Positions 31,647-41,685 of a stretch of DNA of 64,000 nucleotides are shown here, one piece after another. The DNA comes from Dimorphilus gyrociliatus. Its lineage: Eukaryota; Animalia; Annelida. A program made the position numbers and the translations under genes. Numbering within the stretch: the first letter of the stretch is position 1; each line of letters begins with the position of its first letter. Below the pieces are notes generated by a model. The model was given only the letters and a program-made list of their open reading frames with translations. It did no database searches and was not told the origin of the DNA. The DNA is taken from contig CAJFCJ010000004.1 in NCBI GenBank assembly GCA_904063045.1, positions 55,578 to 119,577 of the forward strand. The letters run 5' to 3'.

Positions 31647-34600
31647 TCATCTTTTTCCATGTAACCAATAAGTTTTCATTTCACCTTTGCCCTATAAAAG
31701 TTTCAACTATCATTTCTCCTTTTATTTATCCAGTAATACATCAATTAATTAAAAAAAATTCTTTTCTTATTTACCTTAATTTCCAATGTTCCACGAAATT
31801 CACAGTCAAAATTTCCAAATTCTTCAAGAATTTCATAAGTACTTAGACTAATATGAATTCTATAAGCTACGAAATCGAAAATACAAGTATATAAATAGAC
31901 CTTGTTAAAAACTAAATGTTATTCTCTTTTCCCAATTCTCAAGAATATTATAAACAAGAGAAAACTAAAAATATCTATTTCCTTACCTTGACCATTGCTC
32001 TCCATCCGACTAGCTGTATTCACAGTATCGCCAAACAAACAATATCTAGGCATCTTTAGACCAACGACTCCGGCGCAAACAGGGCCACTATGTAGGCCCA
32101 CTCGGATTTTCAAAGGTTCTCCTGGCATATGGGGAATAACGAAACTCTTTGCTGCATTAACTAGCTGGATAGACATCAAAGCTATTTGACTTGCGTGCTC
32201 TTTACCGTTCCTCACAGGAACTCCAGAAACAACCATATCTATATAAAATATAAAGCATATTTCTTTTACAGACTTTGCTAATTAATAACTATTAATATGT
32301 CAAATGTAAATAACTTACAAGCATCTCCAATTGTCTCAACTTTATATACGTCAAAATTATCAATTATGGAATCAAAACAAGTATAAAGCTTATTTAATAA
32401 GCCAACAACCTGCATCGGCGTCGAATTACCAGACAGATTAGTAAAGCCAACAATATCACTATTTTAAAAAATAAATTATTCATCTTTATCGTCTGTTCAT
32501 TCAATAAAATATATTTAATATGTTCACCTAAAGTAGATGGTACAGGCTGAATACTGTTCCGCACCTATGATTCTACCGTGCCTTAGTTCATCAGCTACAG
32601 CCCTTGGTAGCATACTGTAAAGAAGTCTATCCGTCTTCAATTTCTCTTGTTCTAAATCGGATGTACGATCCGCTACAAGACTTTCCAAGTGTTTAGAATA
32701 TTTTTCCATCTGGAAATTAATGATAAAATTAACAAATACAATAAGTCATGGTAGACTGTAGATTCACCATTAACATCATCATATCAACAGGACTCCTTCG
32801 ATCAGGATTCATCTTCTTTAGTTTCTTCTTAATTATGTCAAAAGTTGGTCGTTCGGACACGGTATTGCTATAACATTCTTGAATGAGCTGCAGGATAAAT
32901 AGGAATGAGCTTGATATATGATAATAATCATTAAATATTACTTTATTGTATTCAACTGGAGAAGGGCATTTTACATCTTCGTCGTATACTTTATTCGATA
33001 GATCAGGCAGGGAGGGCTTCCATCCTATTTTAACTGTTGCAAAGTCTTCTTCCTAATAGTATAATTATCTTATAAGTTAAAAAACAAGAAACGTGAAATA
33101 TAAAACATTTAATACAGAAAAAAGACTTTCATGAAGGGTATGCTTACCCCATATGGATCCTGCCTTGTAGCTATTTCAATAAGTATTATACCAAACGCGT
33201 ATACATCGGCTTCAAAGGATTTGCGAGTGCCGTTTGTACAAACTTCAGGAGCAATGTAAACTACATCTTTTAATCTCTTTTCGTTTTCTTTCTCGGATTC
33301 TTCACTTCTATAAGTTTCTAATCCATAGTCTGTTAGAGGCAGAATTAAGGGATTGATAGCCGCCAATTAGACTCGGTACTTAACGCCCCTTACCTGATAC
33401 TCTTACTGACCATCTATCATCGATCACGCAATTAGATGACTTTAGTCTTCCATGAATAACATTTTTAGAATGTAGATAGCTCATAGCTCCTGCTATATCT
33501 AACGAGAAGGAAAATCTAAAAGACCAATTGAGGGGTGTACTTTCAGATTGGAGCAAATCGCTAAGAGCCCCTTTGGGGCAATACTCTGTTATGAGTGCAA
33601 TGTTTGGAAGATTTATACAGCCTCCAACAAACTTTACCAAATTGGGATGGTCAAGTTGGCGAACGTTTTTAACCTCCTGTCTTATTAACTTGCTTAAAAC
33701 GAAGTCGGATTTAATTAGATTTTTAACTGCGACCATCTTTCCTTCACTGTTAAAAGGAATCATATATATTAACATTTTAGCGGTACTTACTTACTTAGTT
33801 AGTTATACTTACTATATTCCAACTGGTGTAAATAATTGACTATCAATATTCCCTACTCCTCCGCTGTTGCCAGATTTTAAACTTACGCAACTTGGAACAA
33901 AATGCTTGGTTGCAGCTTCTATTTAATAAACAACAACAATTATGGTTATTGCAAAAAGAGTAGGAGTACGTAAATTTCTTATTCATACCTGATACTATAA
34001 TATCATAATCTAATATCCAACTTTCATCCCATAATAATTTTCTTTCCTTGTACTTGGAATACTGTTAAATAGTGTTTATTTATAAAGAATACTTTATCCT
34101 AAAATAGGTGAATGACAATAATTAATACTTACTCCGATCACTGTTAGAAAAGCGCTTACAATTATGCCAGCTGCGACGGCTATTAGAGCTATTTGATATC
34201 CTTTTAGCGGGCATCTCCCACAGTCTTTCGGACATGTGCTGCAAGTTTCCTCTTCTTCACATTTATCATCTCCACAAATTGTTTTGGGGAGTACTTCAAT
34301 GGATTTTTCTAGAGCTATATGAAGCTCTCCAACTTTAAAATGAGCTATTAGTGATGTTTCGCCAACAGTATATAATCCCAATATTTGCGATGTCCATTCT
34401 CTGATGGAAGAAGATCCTATCATAACTTTTGAATGGGTAAATATACTGCCAGATGATGGAATCCATGGTCCACACAATCCATTTTTAACTAACTCAACTT
34501 CAGCCAAGGGACATGAGTGAACATTGACATGATGGATACAACAATTCTCTTGGTTTGCTGCCTTCGAGTCATCTGGACAGGCGGTATTCTCACACCATTT

Positions 34601-36175
34601 TTGAGCAATAACAGGATCTCTAAACAAAAAATAAAAAACTAGATCATCAACATAGGAAGAATAAACTCCTACGTGATCCCTCCGTTGCTCGAAGCGAAGA
34701 AATTTAATTTAAAGCTTCCAGCGGAAGAAACTGCCCAAGTCCAAAACTCTGAATCGAAAGTCAAATCATAAGTGACATTGAAAGCTTTTCCCGCCTTTAT
34801 TTCAGCCGGAGGTGGTAAAATCCATTTAATGTTGATACCTATCAATATTGAAATTGTAAAGTATATAAATTAAACAAATTAATACTTTATATAGCCTCAA
34901 GGGTAAATATTAAATATAGAGTATATAGTACATCTGAAAAGGGATAGAATACAACCTTGGTAAAAGTTTCATATATAAACAATATCTTTTATACATTATA
35001 TAGTTTGCGGAAGTTGTAAAAACAGAAAGAAATTCTATAAATATAATATATTACATGTATATATAGATGATAGAAAATAAGTCCAAATGGACATAGATTC
35101 GATATGACCAAAGATTTGCACTATGATCAATATTGATTGGAGAAATTTTATATAATCGAAAATATCAAGTCTATAAAATCAGTTTAGTAGTCCAATTAAA
35201 TATATATACACATCAGCGAACAATAAATGTATTTATGAATATTATCAATTAATATTCGTATATAGATTGATTATTTTCCCTATTGTATTTTACTCTACTC
35301 TGGATTTTAGTATCATAATTACAGAAACGACAAGATCTGTAGTAATAGTAAGAACTTGTTAATTAATTCTTTATCATAATTAGAGAATATTTCACGATTG
35401 AGTGAATATCCATTATTGGTGTATAGTTATATTTATTATCATACCTGGACAGGTAGAAAATGGTACTGGATTCTGAGAGCTGGCTGATAAGGGCCAACAA
35501 TGAAAATCTGTGTTACCCAAGTCGTGCCAACAACTAATTTCAATTAGTTGAATTTGAAGGATTAATATCTGTTGAAATAAGTTTTGTTTGTTCATAGTTT
35601 TTAATATAGTAATAACGTAATTGAATAATAGTAATATTATTTTAAAACAATTTGAACTATAAACGAATATGCGGGACACGCAAAACACTGTATAATCATT
35701 ATTGTATGTATATTTTCTAATATACTGTATACTTTACTTACGGTAGGATGAGAAATAGCAGTATATAGAATTTAATAAATTATACGAAAGTATAATAAAT
35801 GTAACGTAAAGGTTTAATAAAACAATAGCAACAATATATCCATTAAAGACTGCACGCTAAAGTGAACGAGAACACTAAAATTTTGGGCTAATGAGCTATA
35901 CATTAGATAGGAATTGAGAGATAAATTATTACCTCCTACTTAATTACCAACAAAAAGATATATTTTGTTTAAAATATAAAGAGGTCAGAATAAAATAGAA
36001 ACAAAACTTTTTTTGAAAGATGTTCAATTTTTTATGTTTCTGCTTACTATATTTAAATGATTTTTAGTTATAAATACGAAATAATAGTAATTTTTAAACT
36101 GTTCAATAATTTAATAAATTTGATAAACATATTCAATAAACTCACCGAAAGTAGATAATATAATTTCGAGTTCAT
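31647..36175 (-). CDS. Single-pass receptor guanylyl cyclase (signal, ~220-aa Cys-rich ectodomain, TM, kinase-homology domain, coiled-coil, GC catalytic domain)
   Basis: KHD: [36 protein letters not shown]. Hinge: [20 protein letters not shown]. Catalytic: [52 protein letters not shown]; the E and C guanine-specificity residues are present. First exon 36175-36146 ([10 protein letters not shown]|gtgagt) joins [13 protein letters not shown]. Confidence 0.92.
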
Positions 36176-37168
36176 GTTTCAACTTTTCTCTCCATCCAAA
36201 TGATACAAAACGCCATACGCGTCTAATGCTCGAAAGTTGCCAACCAATCAACAATGCGTAAGGCTTTTGACGTAATTATTCATGTTGTAAAGGTGTTAAA
36301 AACATACGAATTATGGAAAATATACACTTGTAACATTAACTTTTACAATTTGCAACACATTTTCCCCGATACGCAAAGTTATGAAATCGAAAATAACGAT
36401 AGAGTAACTGCTTCAAATTTAAAATTAATGAAATATTACTAGTTCCAATAATGATAGGGAAAAAAATAAATAGGAAAGAATCTGCTATACAATAACTTGG
36501 CGAATAAATTCTGTTAACAATACAGCTTATTAGACTACGAATCACTTGGAATTTATAATATATCGAGGTTTCAAATATAGACTATCCAAGTCTGCTTAAC
36601 CAGAAGTACTATACGGAAAATTTTTGATCTTTTGTTGAGCATTATAGAAAAGATGTTTGAAATCTAAGGAATAAATCTCTGTATGTGATTTAGATGTTGG
36701 TATTAGTTAGGTTTCTTATGGAGGTAACTCTTTTCTTCTTTTTGGATGCAAAGCATGAAACCAAATTAAGGAAAAGTTTTTCTTTTAAAACATACTTTCA
36801 TTATAGACTTCTAGCTATCCTTATCAATTTTACACGTCGTTTTTCCTTTCCAACATTACATTGCTTCCAAAGAACAACTGTTAAATTAATGATTATGTAA
36901 AAATTAGTATTGGGATTTGTTCATCCATACAATGTATACTTTATACAATATATAAATTTATATATACATATATACAGTATATATATATATATATAGTGCA
37001 TGTACGCTTTTCTGGTTACATTTACAGTATTCATAGCAACTGAATTACTGAATAGACTTTCGTTAATATTCAAAGAACTACTCATATATTTATTGAAAAA
37101 GTATTAGATAAAGAGCACTTAAATTATAATTTATTTACTCCAAGTACAGAAACGGATATTAATGATAT

Positions 37169-40100
37169 TTATGAAATATTCCACCCTCGAGATTTTAAAA
37201 TCCAGCTATTTAATAGGTTAAAGTCAACATTTTCTCTTAGCCTACTACTTCTATGGACTAGGTCATCCTTCAGAGTTTCTACGACATTGGTCATTCTTTT
37301 CATTAAGTTCTCTCTTGAAAACTCATTCTGAAGAAAATTGCACATAATATGATATATGTATAGGTTTATAAATGTATTAAAAGGTATACTTCTAAAGGTT
37401 CTAATCTGATTCGCATAATTGTTTCTCTAAGTTCTCCTGAGCATCGCACATTCGGTGTTAGATTTTTCATCATTCTCTGGCAAGCGTCAGTTTTGTGAAG
37501 GATTTGATAGAATAATTTTCTCTCCTTGGATTCATCGTTACCGTATCTTCTTCTCTCAAGATGTTTTAAACGTTTTGTAATTAAGCCCAAATATTGTCTA
37601 ATAGCGTTTTCGCATATAAAACTTCTTCGGTGAGCAGCTAATTCTCTCCAAAGGTCAGTTTCATAAATGTGAGAATCGGTAAAGAGAATCTTAACGGGAT
37701 AAAAATTTTCAATTAAGTGTCCACAGAACATTTTAAAAGTATTAATAACCTCTAATATAACTACACTACATTTCCATAGCATTTCACAGAAAAGGCGAAT
37801 TTCATAGGCTCCATATTCAACTAGCTTATCCTTACCCCTTTCCTCCTTGCTTTCATTCCAATACGATAAACTCGATACTACATTCTACAAAGAAGAAAAA
37901 AATCGTCAGACAGATTGAGACTATGTCTCTAAGAAATAATATATCACAGAAAGTAGGTTAGAGTAGCACAAATAAAGAACGTTGAACTATAAGAGTTACT
38001 TAGATGATTGAGGAAACTTTTTCAGATGCATATCAACGATAATCAATAAATCGCAAAGAAAAAAGTGTAATATAAAATGACATATATGCCTTTGTATCTT
38101 CGACATAAACGATTATGTAGTCTTCGTCGCTATTTTTGGTATGAAGGTTGTACATGAAGCTGCCAGCTCGTGCAATTAGAATGACCTTGTCGGGACGAAT
38201 ATGAGAGACTCCTAATCTGTGGCACAGTTCCTTTACTTGGCCTAAATCAGAGTTTACCGGGCCTAAGTATCATAAACAAATTATATTATACAAGTGTAAT
38301 TTTGATATGACTTTAATGACGTACGAGTATCTAAATTCATAGTTTTGGTTCGAGTTGACCCAAGCCAATTTGATAAAAAGTCAGTATAACTTGTACTCAA
38401 ATCGGTTATAGCAAACTTTTTGTCTAAATTTTCTTTCCATTTCATTAAAATATCAAAAAGTTTCTCATCAGCAGATTCATTTATATGCTAAATTATTCAC
38501 TTTAATTAATTACAATGAGGAGAAAATTATTAAATATATCATACTTCAAACGTATACAATTCACTCATCATCTCTAAGGCAAATTTTGCCTCCTCACACA
38601 AACTTTTATCCTCCCCTACTACTTTAGCATCGCTTCCGTTTAAAACACATTCGACGTAGTATAATAATCTGAAAGTAGAGGTTATTATTTGGTATTCAGA
38701 GTGTTTTTATTCATTAATATAAAGACATACGAGTGCGCGCATACTAGTACAAAATACAATTAATTGTAATTTAATAAATTAGTCAATATAAATTAGAAAT
38801 ATTTATAAAAGAAATAATAATAATAAAAAGAATATCAACTAGACTTGTTAATGTTTCTGGTGTACGATTATGAGTTCTCTTATAATATATTCTTTTAATT
38901 TATAATTAACAAACTTTTGTTAATTGTTTTTGATAGATAATAAACTAGTATATAAATGATAATTAGTTAGTATTTTTACTTGAAACTATCGCTAAAGGTT
39001 TGTAGTGTGGTTGATCTTCTCAAACAAAATTTTTTTCCCTTCTTCGCACCAACTTGACCGCAACTTTGCATTAAGCATCGTTTTATGAAGTCCTTATTTT
39101 TAACTGTAAATAAAACATTACATATTTATAGACAGTATTATCTAATGTATTGTTTTGTTCATTCATATCCTGATTATATGTATACTATTTATCTATTTTA
39201 CAGCATATATATATATATGTATATGCCTTTTATAGTTAACTTCACAAAGCTTCCTGTCACGATGATAACTATTGAATTTTTTCTTCTTGGACGAATCACA
39301 CTAATAGCGATTCCATGGAAACATATTAATTATTGATCTATTAAGTTACTTTATCAATATAATAACTTTAATTTATAATTATAATTTGATTAGTCAAACT
39401 ACACTTATTATTAAATATATCTCTTACCAAAAGATATATTGCAGTTCATTAATTCTTCAAATTGTTTTGAACAGTATAAAGTACATTGTGGTGATCTTAA
39501 AGATTTCTCAACTATTTCGACGAATCGAGCTTTGCCAGTATTAAGAAAATGAGCAAAATGAAATAAATCGCAAGCGTATAACCATTCCTAAATATTTTAA
39601 GAATATAAAATGATATCATATTAATACAATTAATTAAATTCTCTTTAAGTACCATATCAAACACATCATACTTTTCTCTATTATGCCTATTCATAAAGGA
39701 AAAAAAATGCTCAGGTCTCATTCGATAGACTATAATTAGTTTATTAAATTTCGTTCTTTGATTTTTCTGCTTAATACAACCAGAATACCAAGGACACCAA
39801 ATCAATCCAGCGTATAGAATCTCATCAATAGAATCTTTAAATAGTGACATGATGTTGGATAAAAACTTTTGTTTAGAGCTCTCCGACACCGCTGTTGGAA
39901 GATTTGTTATTGTTAATTGTCTTAAAGTTTCCAGTATTCCGGCGTCCGCCTGTACACCATCGAAATTTGCATAGGAACCTTCCAGACGGGATTTAATGTT
40001 ACGAGACTCTTCCAATAGCTTGAAATTTAGGTCGAAATCTATAAATATTATTGCTTTTTAATGATCTCAATTATACATTTATATTACCTCTCTTTTCTTC

Positions 40101-41685
40101 TAGATGCCTATACAATTGCTCGTGACCCTGAATAGCCAATGTTGCTGCTCTAAGAGCATTTGAATCGCATCCAGCCATAGTACTGAATAAGCTCTCTATT
40201 TGCCGAAATAGAAACAATTGATTATAAGGTACCTTTTTAAATAAAAACTATGTAATTTCTCAATCGTAAGAAATCAACAACAGTAATCTATCTAAACATT
40301 TCATCATTCTGATGAATCATTACACATCATTTATTCGTTTGATAAATAACATGGTAATCAGTGTATTTAAAGTAAAATTACCCTAAAATATTTGCAAGCT
40401 TTCTCTTGTTAACAATATGAACAATACAATTTCTGTACAAGACAAACAAATCAACAGCAACTCTTGGCGAAACATCTACACATCTCTACCAGTTTTCATA
40501 TATATATATATATATATACGAATTAGGCTGAATGAGTTTAATTAAATATATAACAATTTGATTAAAAATGGCAAGATTCTACAATCTATAATTTCATCTT
40601 ATGGGAAAAACAATATAAAGAATTAATAGCTTAATTACTTCGTCAGATAGCGTATTAATAGGTTGGAAAAAAACAAAAACAAAAAGTTGATATACAGTAC
40701 CATTTTAAACAACAAAAAAGAGAGAGATAATCCTTTTTTATATAAGTAATACTATATTAAACGAAAACAAAGAAACGTATAAAACCTATAAATGATTCAA
40801 TTCAAAAAACTTTGTAATCTAGGTTCTTTATCAGCAAAAGTATAATTCTTAACTTGAAGGTGAACTATGCGCAGAAAAAAAAATCGTGTTATTTGATAAG
40901 AAACGGTGAGTAGGTCACGATTTTTGCCTTAAATATACTTGTAAATATTACTAAACAATTCATAGTCTTTAATGAAATATTTTACATTAAAAAATGCATT
41001 AATTCTAATGGAATAATGTACGTGTTACTTTCAACTGCTCACTCTAACTGTCTCTCTTTTCATCTCTAACTTTTTATCTATCTCTATCTCTTTCTCTTTT
41101 CTACCTATTCTAAACTCATTTTCTCAAAAAAAATTATAAAACTTTTAGCTTTATTTTTAAATAAAAACAACTAGGAAATAATCTGTTTAATATCAAATAT
41201 ACAATATACTGTATGTAAGAGTTTCTCAATTGAAACATAATCATAGTCAAGTTGACAAACAGCATACAAAAAAAGAAATACGATTTTTCACATTTAGTTA
41301 TTTAATGGTACAACCCCAGTTTCAACTGAATGTTGACGATCCGTATTATCAAGTCCATCATCACCATCTAAAATGGCAAATATAAGTTAGTTTGCTATAT
41401 TTAAACTAACAAATTATTAAAATATTATTCTCAACAAACCCATTGAATTCTTTTCTGGTGTATCTTCCACTTTCTTTCCAATAGAAAGGTCGGAAAATCC
41501 TATTGATAAGCAAATAGTATATTATATATAATATATATATAAATTTTCGACAAACCTTCACTCTTTTCTTCTCGAGTTGTTTGAGCTTTATAAGCAAACT
41601 CTACTTTTTGACTTCCGTTTCTCTCTTGCTTCACCGATTTGCTTAGCTTGTATTCATTTTTTTTCTTTTTTCCAAAACATCCCAT
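37169..41685 (-). CDS. ~700-aa protein with N-terminal MGC lipidation motif and two tandem RlaP/COG3541-like Pol-beta superfamily nucleotidyltransferase domains (N-terminal degenerate, C-terminal intact)
   Basis: Exons 41685-41556, 41499-41440, 41367-~41315, 40232-40088, 40038-39653, 39587-39428, 39103-38980, 38668-38545, 38487-38325, 38262-38090, 37884-37750, 37689-37390, 37327-37169; splice phases are consistent. The junction around 41315-40233 is uncertain. Domain 2 motifs: AGSFMYNLHTKNSDEDYIIVY; EYGAYEIRLFCEML; WRELAAHRRSFICENAIRQYLG; KLFYQ..GELRETIMRIR; SRLRENVDFNLLNSWILKSR. Confidence 0.8.

What the first reader, a model, noticed from the sequence alone, without database searches (positions are those of the whole stretch)
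37169..41685. Animal multi-exon gene encoding a tandem RlaP/COG3541-type Pol-beta nucleotidyltransferase (pseudo-enzyme plus intact enzyme), hidden from the ORF track
Seen: phase-consistent splicing of about 13 exons gives a ~700-aa protein. Exon 38262-38090 encodes VILIARAGSFMYNLHTKNSDEDYIIVY, the hG[GS]x9-13DxDh motif (GS at 38159-38164, DED at 38120-38128). It is followed by EYGAYEIRLFCEML..ILEILF, WRELAAHRRSFI..RQYLG, KLFYQ, GELRETIMRIR and SRLRENVD..LNSWILKSR. Established: GS...DxD is the Pol-beta superfamily catalytic signature. The downstream order (D/E-x4-E-h-x-x-F, W..L...R..F, Y.G, K..Y, GE.R..h..IR, S.LPE..D...L..Wh...R) is what I recall for the RlaP/Nuc-transf (PF10127, COG3541) family, described mainly in bacteria and phages in RNA-repair and conflict contexts. 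Inference: an intron-rich (so long-resident, not contaminant) animal RlaP-like enzyme of unknown substrate. It could add nucleotides to RNA ends, AMPylate proteins, or make a nucleotide second messenger. I know of no characterised animal member.
Basis: partly seen in the sequence, partly recalled or inferred. Interest (0 to 1): 0.9.

Follow-up and report, generated by a model that had tools for sequence, protein, structure and literature searches.

The report
Animal tandem RlaP RNA nucleotidyltransferase gene

Summary
The core observation holds, but the gene model needed correction.

Transcript contigs of a public run confirm all nine coding introns, including a GC-AG intron. The real protein has 10 coding exons and 604 aa (ATG 40178, stop 37169), not about 13 exons and 700 aa.

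Orthologues from molluscs and a sponge pass Pfam RlaP (PF10127) above its cut-off. A local RlaP profile hits the window's protein at E 1.6e-46. All 24 family-conserved catalytic-half residues are kept.

The N-half is a diverged RlaP copy (hhalign 97%, E 5.6e-11). It folds like RlaP proteins but has Cys-Pro-Trp and Lys..Asn in place of Gly-Ser and Asp-x-Asp.

A tree puts the gene in an animal clade (98/94) beside protist tandem RlaPs and away from the bacterial and phage references. This favours old eukaryotic descent with many losses over recent transfer.

Most likely function, inferred from bacterial RlaP: adding a few nucleotides to RNA 3'-OH ends.

The scan had already noted the dead first repeat on this same stretch (s1-083178).

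The parts
40088..40178 (-). Coding exon 1 (ATG at 40178-40176; the exon itself starts at 40195 with 17 nt of leader)
   Evidence: Junctions 40195|40382 and 40038|40088 are in the transcript contig. The N-terminus aligns with orthologue N-termini.
39653..40038 (-). Coding exon 2: end of the N-terminal helical hairpin and first part of the dead RlaP-like domain. It has CPW at 39796-39788 and K127/N129 at 39751-39743 where GS and DxD would be.
   Evidence: Junction 39586/7|39652/3; frame analysis; residue mapping.
39428..39587 (-). Coding exon 3 (dead RlaP-like domain)
   Evidence: Junctions; hhalign of N-half against C-half.
38980..39103 (-). Coding exon 4 (dead RlaP-like domain, helical part)
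   Evidence: Junctions 39103|39428 and 38668|38980.
38545..38668 (-). Coding exon 5 (dead RlaP-like domain, helical part)
   Evidence: Junctions.
38325..38487 (-). Coding exon 6 (end of the dead RlaP-like domain, with conserved W336 and R341)
   Evidence: Junctions; conservation.
38090..38262 (-). Coding exon 7: start of the active RlaP domain, with G383-S384 (38164-38159) and D395-E-D397 (38128-38120)
   Evidence: As a lone exon it scores Pfam NTP_transf_2 E 0.011 and RlaP E 0.17.
37885..38089 (-). GC-AG intron (205 nt)
   Evidence: The contig skips 205 nt with ends CT..GC on the + strand. Orthologue collinearity across the junction.
37750..37884 (-). Coding exon 8: strand and helix carrying E430 and E435 (37818-37801)
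   Evidence: Junctions; both residues invariant in all 57 aligned sequences.
37390..37689 (-). Coding exon 9: helical domain of the active RlaP unit (K510, Y513, H517, R547)
   Evidence: Junctions. phmmer with this stretch found the family. Conservation.
37169..37327 (-). Coding exon 10: C-terminal helix (W594, R599) and stop TAA. AATAAA signals follow at 37135 and 37094.
41294..41685 (-). Separate upstream ORF of 87 codons in three exons (41685-41556, 41499-41440, 41367-41294). It starts Met-Gly-Cys followed by a lysine run. Its last exon runs on to 40382 and is then spliced to 40195.
   Evidence: Contig record 3 covers 40382-41367 without a break. Joints 41367|41440 and 40195|40382. Stop position and 929-nt spacer.

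Best explanation
The locus encodes a 604-aa protein with three parts:
- an N-terminal helical hairpin (about aa 1-60);
- a catalytically dead RlaP-like domain (about aa 65-349);
- an intact RlaP-type Pol-beta nucleotidyltransferase domain (aa 350-604).

Shown here: the exon structure and its expression; membership of the RlaP family; the internal duplication; the loss of the metal- and NTP-binding residues in the first copy and their full retention in the second; and descent within an animal clade that has protist relatives.

Inferred: the active domain binds NTP-Mg through G383-S384, D395, D397 and E430. Like the bacterial RlaPs studied in vitro, it adds a small number of nucleotides, untemplated, to the 3'-OH of RNAs such as cleaved or trimmed tRNAs, so that they can be religated or marked. 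The dead domain, which has its own conserved residues, probably acts as a fused partner subunit that binds RNA or positions the active domain.
For: Gene structure and expression.

Family:
- Ten homologues scanned, eight of them two-domain orthologues, score 31.7-95.9 bits on PF10127 against a cut-off of 23.
- A local HMM built from non-animal RlaPs, including bacterial and phage ones, hits the window protein aa 362-604 at E 1.6e-46.
- All 24 invariant or near-invariant positions of the catalytic half are kept.

Fold:
- AlphaFold model of the Mytilus orthologue has pLDDT 92.8 and pTM 0.89.
- Its C-half matches B. subtilis YcgL and M. jannaschii MJ0002 at TM 0.68-0.73.
- It also matches the Pol-beta enzymes HalB, ANT(4') and AadA at Z 6-9.

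Duplication:
- hhalign of N-half against C-half gives probability 97.1%, E 5.6e-11, over 190 columns.
- The N-half modelled alone has pLDDT 94.4 and again matches YcgL and MJ0002 best, at TM 0.49-0.62.
- The N-half has C-P-W and K/R..N in place of G-S and D-x-D in essentially all orthologues.

RNA link:
- Bacterial relatives seen here sit in Hen1-RlaP-RlaP-Pnkp and RtcB-RlaP operons, and next to a Ro60-like gene.
- A protist relative carries a YTH RNA-binding domain.
- Bacterial RlaP adds one or two NMPs to RNA 3'-OH ends and prefers damaged-tRNA mimics (bioRxiv 10.64898/2025.12.29.696909).
Against: - No biochemical data exist for any eukaryotic member.
- The window's spliced protein could not be scanned against Pfam itself. 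Single exons stay below threshold.
- The structures were predicted for the Mytilus orthologue (about 36% identical overall), not for this protein.
- Animals have no operons that would tie the gene to RtcB or Pnkp, so the RNA-repair setting is carried over from bacteria.
- The nearest solved folds include enzymes that act on small molecules (ANT) or make signalling oligonucleotides (HalB), so the substrate is not fixed by the fold.
- The bacterial data come from a preprint.
Confidence: 0.6

Rival explanations
1. It is a signal-making enzyme of innate immunity. The active domain would make free oligonucleotides or other nucleotide messengers, as Hailong HalB, OAS or CD-NTases do. The dead domain would act as the sensor, as the inactive domains of OAS2 and OAS3 do.
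For: HalB is among the best solved-structure matches of the C-half (Z 8.7 over 175 residues; TM by target 0.45-0.49). The layout of a dead plus a live NTase domain resembles OAS2/3 (my knowledge). One relative is fused to an nSTAND3 NTPase domain typical of conflict systems (P0142).
Against: Sequence membership is in RlaP, not in OAS, SMODS or HalB families. PADLOC gives no hit. The residues shared with bacterial RlaPs cover the whole cleft. The characterised RlaPs extend RNA rather than make free products. Z of 8-9 is in the range the tool calls common.
Confidence: 0.15
2. It nucleotidylylates a protein or a small molecule (AMPylation, or an aminoglycoside-type transfer) rather than RNA.
For: ANT(4'), AadA, LinB and the DrrA AMPylation domain are among the structural matches.
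Against: These matches are weak (Foldseek E 3e-3 to 1e-1, TM 0.4 or less). They are much poorer than the match to RlaP-family proteins (TM 0.68-0.73). There is no sequence relation to those families.
Confidence: 0.08
3. One reading: one protein of about 700 aa and 13 exons that starts at MGCFGKKKK (41685) and would be membrane-anchored by acylation.
For: The first two upstream exons and the acceptor of the third are real and lie on the same assembled transcript contig as the RlaP exons.
Against: The third upstream exon runs on through a TAA at 41296-41294. No canonical donor gives an in-frame join. None of the orthologues aligned has such an N-terminal extension.
Confidence: 0.03
4. It is a recent horizontal acquisition from bacteria or phages, or a contaminant.
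For: RlaP is overwhelmingly bacterial and viral. 526 phage records hold relatives.
Against: The gene has nine spliceosomal introns in the coding part. It keeps the same neighbour, a receptor guanylyl cyclase, in a related species' contig. It sits in a 98/94-supported animal clade with sponges branching deeper than the lophotrochozoans, beside protist tandem RlaPs. Nine of the ten bacterial and phage references form their own 99/99 clade.
Confidence: 0.04

Closest known systems
Bacterial RlaP (PF10127), e.g. Pseudomonas fluorescens and P. aeruginosa RlaP (bioRxiv 10.64898/2025.12.29.696909)
   Same: The same Pfam family for the C-half. The same motif set: hG[GS], S-D-x-D, an acidic residue then E on the next strand and helix, K..YH, R in the helical domain, and a terminal W....R helix. 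The same two-lobed layout of an NTase domain plus a helical domain. The bacterial enzymes add 1-2 NMPs to RNA 3'-OH ends.
   Different: The bacterial proteins have one domain of about 250 aa and are encoded in RtcB or Pnkp/Hen1 operons. This protein is eukaryotic and intron-rich. It carries an extra N-terminal hairpin and a fused, catalytically dead second copy. The position where the preprint reports a third conserved Asp is Glu here. Its activity is untested.
Uncharacterised metazoan orthologues (e.g. Mytilus LOC127721312, Lingula LOC106178780, Aplysia LOC101861911, Ephydatia EMCRGX_G033875, Sycon LOC135813966)
   Same: The same architecture and length (about 570-640 aa), collinear end to end. 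They are 35-37% identical overall and up to 49% in the catalytic half. They have the same dead and live motif pattern.
   Different: They are only database predictions named 'uncharacterized protein'. The window's copy is the more diverged, probably annelid, member.
Protist multi-RlaP proteins (Platysulcus tardus, Diphylleia rotans, Mastigamoeba balamuthi)
   Same: Two or three RlaP-like domains in one chain. Their catalytic domains form the sister group of the animal clade.
   Different: In several of them both copies are still recognised by Pfam or by the local HMM. Platysulcus adds a YTH domain. The domain order differs in some.
B. subtilis YcgL and M. jannaschii MJ0002 (uncharacterised; I recall them as PF10127 members)
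   Same: They are the best structural matches of both halves: TM by hit 0.68-0.73 for the C-half and 0.58-0.62 for the N-half.
   Different: They are single-domain prokaryotic proteins, and only predicted structures were compared.
OAS2 / OAS3 (an analogy, not a relation)
   Same: Tandem Pol-beta-type domains in which the N-terminal copies have lost catalysis and the last copy is active (my knowledge).
   Different: They belong to a different family (OAS1_C, cGAS-like), are activated by dsRNA and make 2'-5' oligoadenylate. There is no sequence relation.
Hailong HalB and aminoglycoside nucleotidyltransferases ANT(4') and AadA
   Same: The nearest solved folds: an NTase domain followed by a helical domain (Z 6-9).
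   Different: There is no family-level sequence match, no PADLOC hit, and the substrates differ.

Membership tests
RlaP (Pfam PF10127) | Score above the Pfam gathering cut-off (23 bits) | tested here: met
   All eight two-domain orthologues tested score 31.7-52.5 bits in the C-half. The window's spliced protein cannot be handed to the Pfam tool, and its GS/DxD exon alone gives 12 bits. A local HMM of 23 non-animal RlaPs scores the window protein 148 bits, E 1.6e-46, over profile positions 15-236.
RlaP (Pfam PF10127) | Pol-beta catalytic set: hG[GS], DxD and a third carboxylate | tested here: met
   G383-S384, D395-E-D397 and E430 (Asp in the single-domain relatives), plus invariant E435.
RlaP (Pfam PF10127) | NTase lobe plus helical lobe, with the last helix packing back, as described for the PfRlaP crystal structure | tested here: inconclusive
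   The predicted orthologue model (pLDDT 92.8) matches the predicted models of YcgL and MJ0002 over the whole domain (TM 0.68-0.73). The PfRlaP structure itself was not found in the PDB copy, so no direct comparison was made.
RlaP (Pfam PF10127) | Gene neighbourhood with an RNA ligase or RNA-repair genes (the origin of the name) | not testable with these tools
   This holds for bacterial relatives seen here. It has no meaning for an animal gene; the neighbours here are a small upstream ORF and a receptor guanylyl cyclase.
RlaP (Pfam PF10127) | Adds 1-2 NMPs to RNA 3'-OH ends | not testable with these tools
   This needs an enzyme assay. It is known only for two Pseudomonas enzymes.
Second (N-terminal) RlaP repeat as a true RlaP domain | Recognisable homology and fold, and presence of catalytic residues | tested here: inconclusive
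   Homology and fold are met: hhalign 97.1%, E 5.6e-11, and best fold matches YcgL and MJ0002. Pfam does not see it: 1 of 37 N-halves hits, at E 0.079. The catalytic residues are absent: C-P-W and K/R..N. It is a dead derivative, not a working member.
NTP_transf_2 (PF01909, minimal nucleotidyltransferases) | Score above the cut-off (21 bits) | tested here: not met
   The window exon scores 16.6 bits. Full-length orthologues score 16-21.2 bits, always below their RlaP score.
Anti-phage NTases (HalB, CD-NTase) in PADLOC | Match to a defence-system profile | tested here: not met
   No PADLOC family at E 0.01 or better for orthologues, single-domain relatives or the catalytic exon.

The most novel reading that the evidence does not exclude
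Sponges, lophotrochozoans and scattered protists keep an ancient eukaryotic RNA-end repair or tailing enzyme of the bacterial and phage RlaP type, rebuilt as a fused dead-plus-live pseudo-dimer. It would restore or mark the 3' ends of tRNAs or other RNAs cut by stress- or pathogen-derived ribonucleases, perhaps ahead of RtcB ligation. That pathway would be missing from every standard animal model because the gene was lost there.
Probability: 0.35. Interest if true: 0.7.

Novelty: new variant of a known kind. Interest (0 to 1): 0.5.

Why it matters
RlaP is only now being characterised, in bacteria, as an RNA-repair accessory enzyme. Its eukaryotic members have been mentioned only as a small minority.

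This locus gives a transcript-verified animal gene model. It also shows that the animal and protist proteins are tandem RlaPs in which one copy has become a conserved pseudo-enzyme. That architecture is invisible to Pfam, and I found no paper describing it.

If the protein extends RNA 3' ends, some animals would have a bacterial-style RNA-damage response absent from vertebrates, flies and nematodes. That would give a concrete enzyme to test in molluscs, annelids or sponges. If it does something else, the dead-plus-live design still offers a compact case for studying how pseudo-enzyme partners arise by duplication.

Tried and rejected
Dropping the third exon restores one frame but breaks at 39781. 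Only the donor at 39652 works.
- Pfam on single exons gave only sub-threshold hits.
- A profile search of solved-structure sequences gave nothing relevant, only apolipoprotein noise.
- Pfam on 37 N-halves gave no family.
Bacterial and phage references were instead taken from the plasmid and phage collections.
- PADLOC gave nothing, and NCBIfam gave only one sub-threshold chance hit.
- The word-indexed homologue search with single-domain RlaPs returned mostly unnamed metagenome proteins. The origin of the closest single-domain relatives therefore stays unclear.
- I did not test the organism's identity. Earlier notes call it the annelid Dimorphilus gyrociliatus. The tree only shows a lophotrochozoan position.
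- Foldseek and VIA matches to the first 65 residues are generic helical hairpins and were ignored.
Full report
**What is in the sequence**

The window is AT-rich (70% A+T). It carries typical animal genes: an SLC6 transporter, a kelch protein, a receptor guanylyl cyclase and a PP2C phosphatase. On the minus strand between 40178 and 37169, open stretches flanked by splice sites can be joined into one reading frame.

38159-38164 reads Gly-Ser and 38120-38128 reads Asp-Glu-Asp.

**Gene model**

The third upstream exon cannot be joined in frame to the exon at 40195. The exon beginning at 40038 must run to 39653, not 39781.

The corrected model has 10 coding exons and 604 aa. The exons are 40178-40088, 40038-39653, 39587-39428, 39103-38980, 38668-38545, 38487-38325, 38262-38090, 37884-37750, 37689-37390 and 37327-37169.

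One public run (X1, stored as assembled contigs) holds spliced contigs that skip exactly these nine introns. One of them, the 205-nt intron 38089-37885, has GC-AG ends. The 604-aa product aligns collinearly from first to last residue with proteins of 617-686 aa from other organisms.

**The upstream ORF**

It is then spliced (186-nt intron) to 40195.

Read from ATG 41685, the three upstream exons give an 87-codon ORF that stops at TAA 41296-41294. In the spliced RNA, 929 nt with 14 further ATGs separate this stop from the main ATG.

The MGCFGKKKK... N-terminus is therefore not part of the enzyme. The data cannot tell whether the contig reflects a true two-ORF mRNA, read-through from an upstream small gene, or an assembly join.

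**Family**

As single exons the window gives only weak hits: NTP_transf_2 at E 0.011 and RlaP at E 0.17.

- A phmmer search of 1.84 billion representative proteins, using the open stretch 37884-37390, found 83 relatives. Many are 600-690 aa long.
- Ten of them were scanned. All match Pfam RlaP (PF10127) above the 23-bit cut-off. In the eight two-domain proteins the match lies in the C-terminal half (31.7-52.5 bits). The single-domain relatives reach up to 95.9 bits.
- I built a local HMM from 23 non-animal RlaPs, including proteins translated from Deinococcus, Bacillus, Mycobacterium and two phage records. It scores the window's spliced protein 148 bits (E 1.6e-46) over aa 362-604.
- All 24 positions that are invariant or nearly so in the catalytic half of 57 aligned sequences are kept in the window protein. 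They include G383, S384, D395, D397, E430, E435, K510, R547, W594 and R599.

**Fold**

The model has pLDDT 92.8 and pTM 0.89.

- Residues 390-615 match the predicted structures of B. subtilis YcgL and M. jannaschii MJ0002 (TM by hit 0.68 and 0.73, probability 1.00). I recall both as PF10127 members.
- Among solved structures the best matches are Pol-beta enzymes with a helical second lobe: Hailong HalB, ANT(4'), AadA, LinB and 3c18, at Z 6-9.
- The published PfRlaP crystal structure was not found in the PDB copy.

**The first half is a dead copy**

- A profile of the N-halves aligns with a profile of the C-halves at 97.1% probability, E 5.6e-11, over 190 columns. The alignment runs from the strand after the DxD position to the last helix.
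- Pfam does not recognise the N-half.
- Modelled alone (pLDDT 94.4), it again matches YcgL (TM 0.56/0.62) and MJ0002 (TM 0.49/0.58) best.
- Where the active copy has Gly-Ser and Asp-x-Asp, the first copy has Cys-Pro-Trp and Lys/Arg-x-Asn in nearly all orthologues. In the window these are C112-P113-W114, K127 and N129.
- These replacement residues are themselves conserved, so the domain is under selection for a non-catalytic role.

The scan had already noted this on the same stretch (s1-083178). I tested it independently here.

**Distribution and descent**

Named orthologues with the same architecture come from many molluscs, the brachiopod Lingula, and the sponges Ephydatia and Sycon. All are labelled uncharacterised.

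Multi-RlaP proteins also occur in protists of several supergroups: Platysulcus (with a YTH domain), Diphylleia and Mastigamoeba.

I built a maximum-likelihood tree of 65 catalytic-type domains. Nine long or degenerate rows were left out and are listed in that call.

- The window sits inside a clade supported at 98/94. It holds all named animal sequences, with the sponges branching deeper than the lophotrochozoans.
- That clade lies beside the protist tandem proteins (90/86).
- Nine of the ten bacterial and phage references form their own clade (99/99).

A contig from a related species has the orthologue (46-78% identity per exon) next to the same receptor guanylyl cyclase gene.

Together with the nine introns, this argues for long vertical residence and repeated loss, not recent transfer or contamination. 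The bacterial sampling is thin, so the deep origin remains open. Earlier notes of this scan name the genome as the annelid Dimorphilus gyrociliatus. I did not test that; the tree only shows a lophotrochozoan position.

**Likely mechanism**

Bacterial relatives fetched here lie between Hen1 and Pnkp (two adjacent RlaP genes, Deinococcus) and directly after RtcB (Treponema). A metagenomic relative lies near a Ro60-like gene.

A December 2025 preprint reports the following for two Pseudomonas RlaPs:
- they label only RNA among cell macromolecules;
- they add one or two NMPs to 3'-OH ends;
- they prefer mimics of cleaved tRNA;
- they can restore function to over-trimmed tRNA after ligation.

The residues shared between the animal proteins and single-domain RlaPs cover the catalytic site and the helical lobe. 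The most economical reading is therefore the same chemistry on RNA ends. The dead copy would act as a fused partner, perhaps replacing a second subunit.

This step is inference. Signalling-oligonucleotide synthesis (as in HalB or OAS) and transfer to proteins or small molecules are not excluded.

**Verdict**

This is a sound, expressed gene of a known enzyme family in an unusual host and architecture. The family call and the pseudo-enzyme idea stand. The 700-aa, 13-exon model does not.

The orthologues are already in databases and a preprint mentions eukaryotic members, so novelty lies in two points: the dead-plus-live tandem design and the absence of any functional study in eukaryotes.

Noticed in passing
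window 41685-40382 (minus strand): An 87-codon ORF starts Met-Gly-Cys followed by a lysine run, which looks like a dual-acylation membrane anchor. It lies on the same assembled transcript as the RlaP ORF, separated from it by 929 nt with 14 ATGs. It could be a small upstream gene with read-through, a two-ORF mRNA or an assembly join.
   Followed up: partly
window 38089-37885: A GC-AG intron, confirmed by a transcript contig.
   Followed up: yes
window 39427-39104: Besides the spliced form, a low-depth contig (39075-39457, depth 25.8 against 170-490) runs unspliced across this 324-nt intron. This could be intron retention or pre-mRNA.
   Followed up: no
L001 4776-6481 (Deinococcus gobiensis plasmid P2): Two adjacent RlaP-type genes sit between Hen1 and Pnkp. 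Both keep the DxD motif (one has Gly-Ser, the other Gly-Ala). This is an unfused two-RlaP arrangement that parallels the fused eukaryotic tandem.
   Followed up: partly
P0026 (Platysulcus tardus, 1025 aa): A YTH (m6A-RNA reader) domain is followed by three RlaP-like domains, the middle one degenerate. This ties eukaryotic multi-RlaP proteins to RNA.
   Followed up: partly
P0142 (327 aa, unnamed assembly): An RlaP match overlaps a sub-threshold match to an nSTAND3 NTPase domain (25.9 bits against a cut-off of 27.2). That domain type is common in conflict systems.
   Followed up: no
contig of P0024 (ENA sample ERZ27310456, no DNA returned): A single-domain RlaP lies in a tight same-strand gene row with a formyltransferase and a Ro60-like (TROVE plus vWA) protein.
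   Followed up: no
L006 5296-8024 and window about 33380-36175: The receptor guanylyl cyclase downstream of the RlaP gene is in the same place and orientation in a related species' contig (conserved microsynteny).
   Followed up: partly
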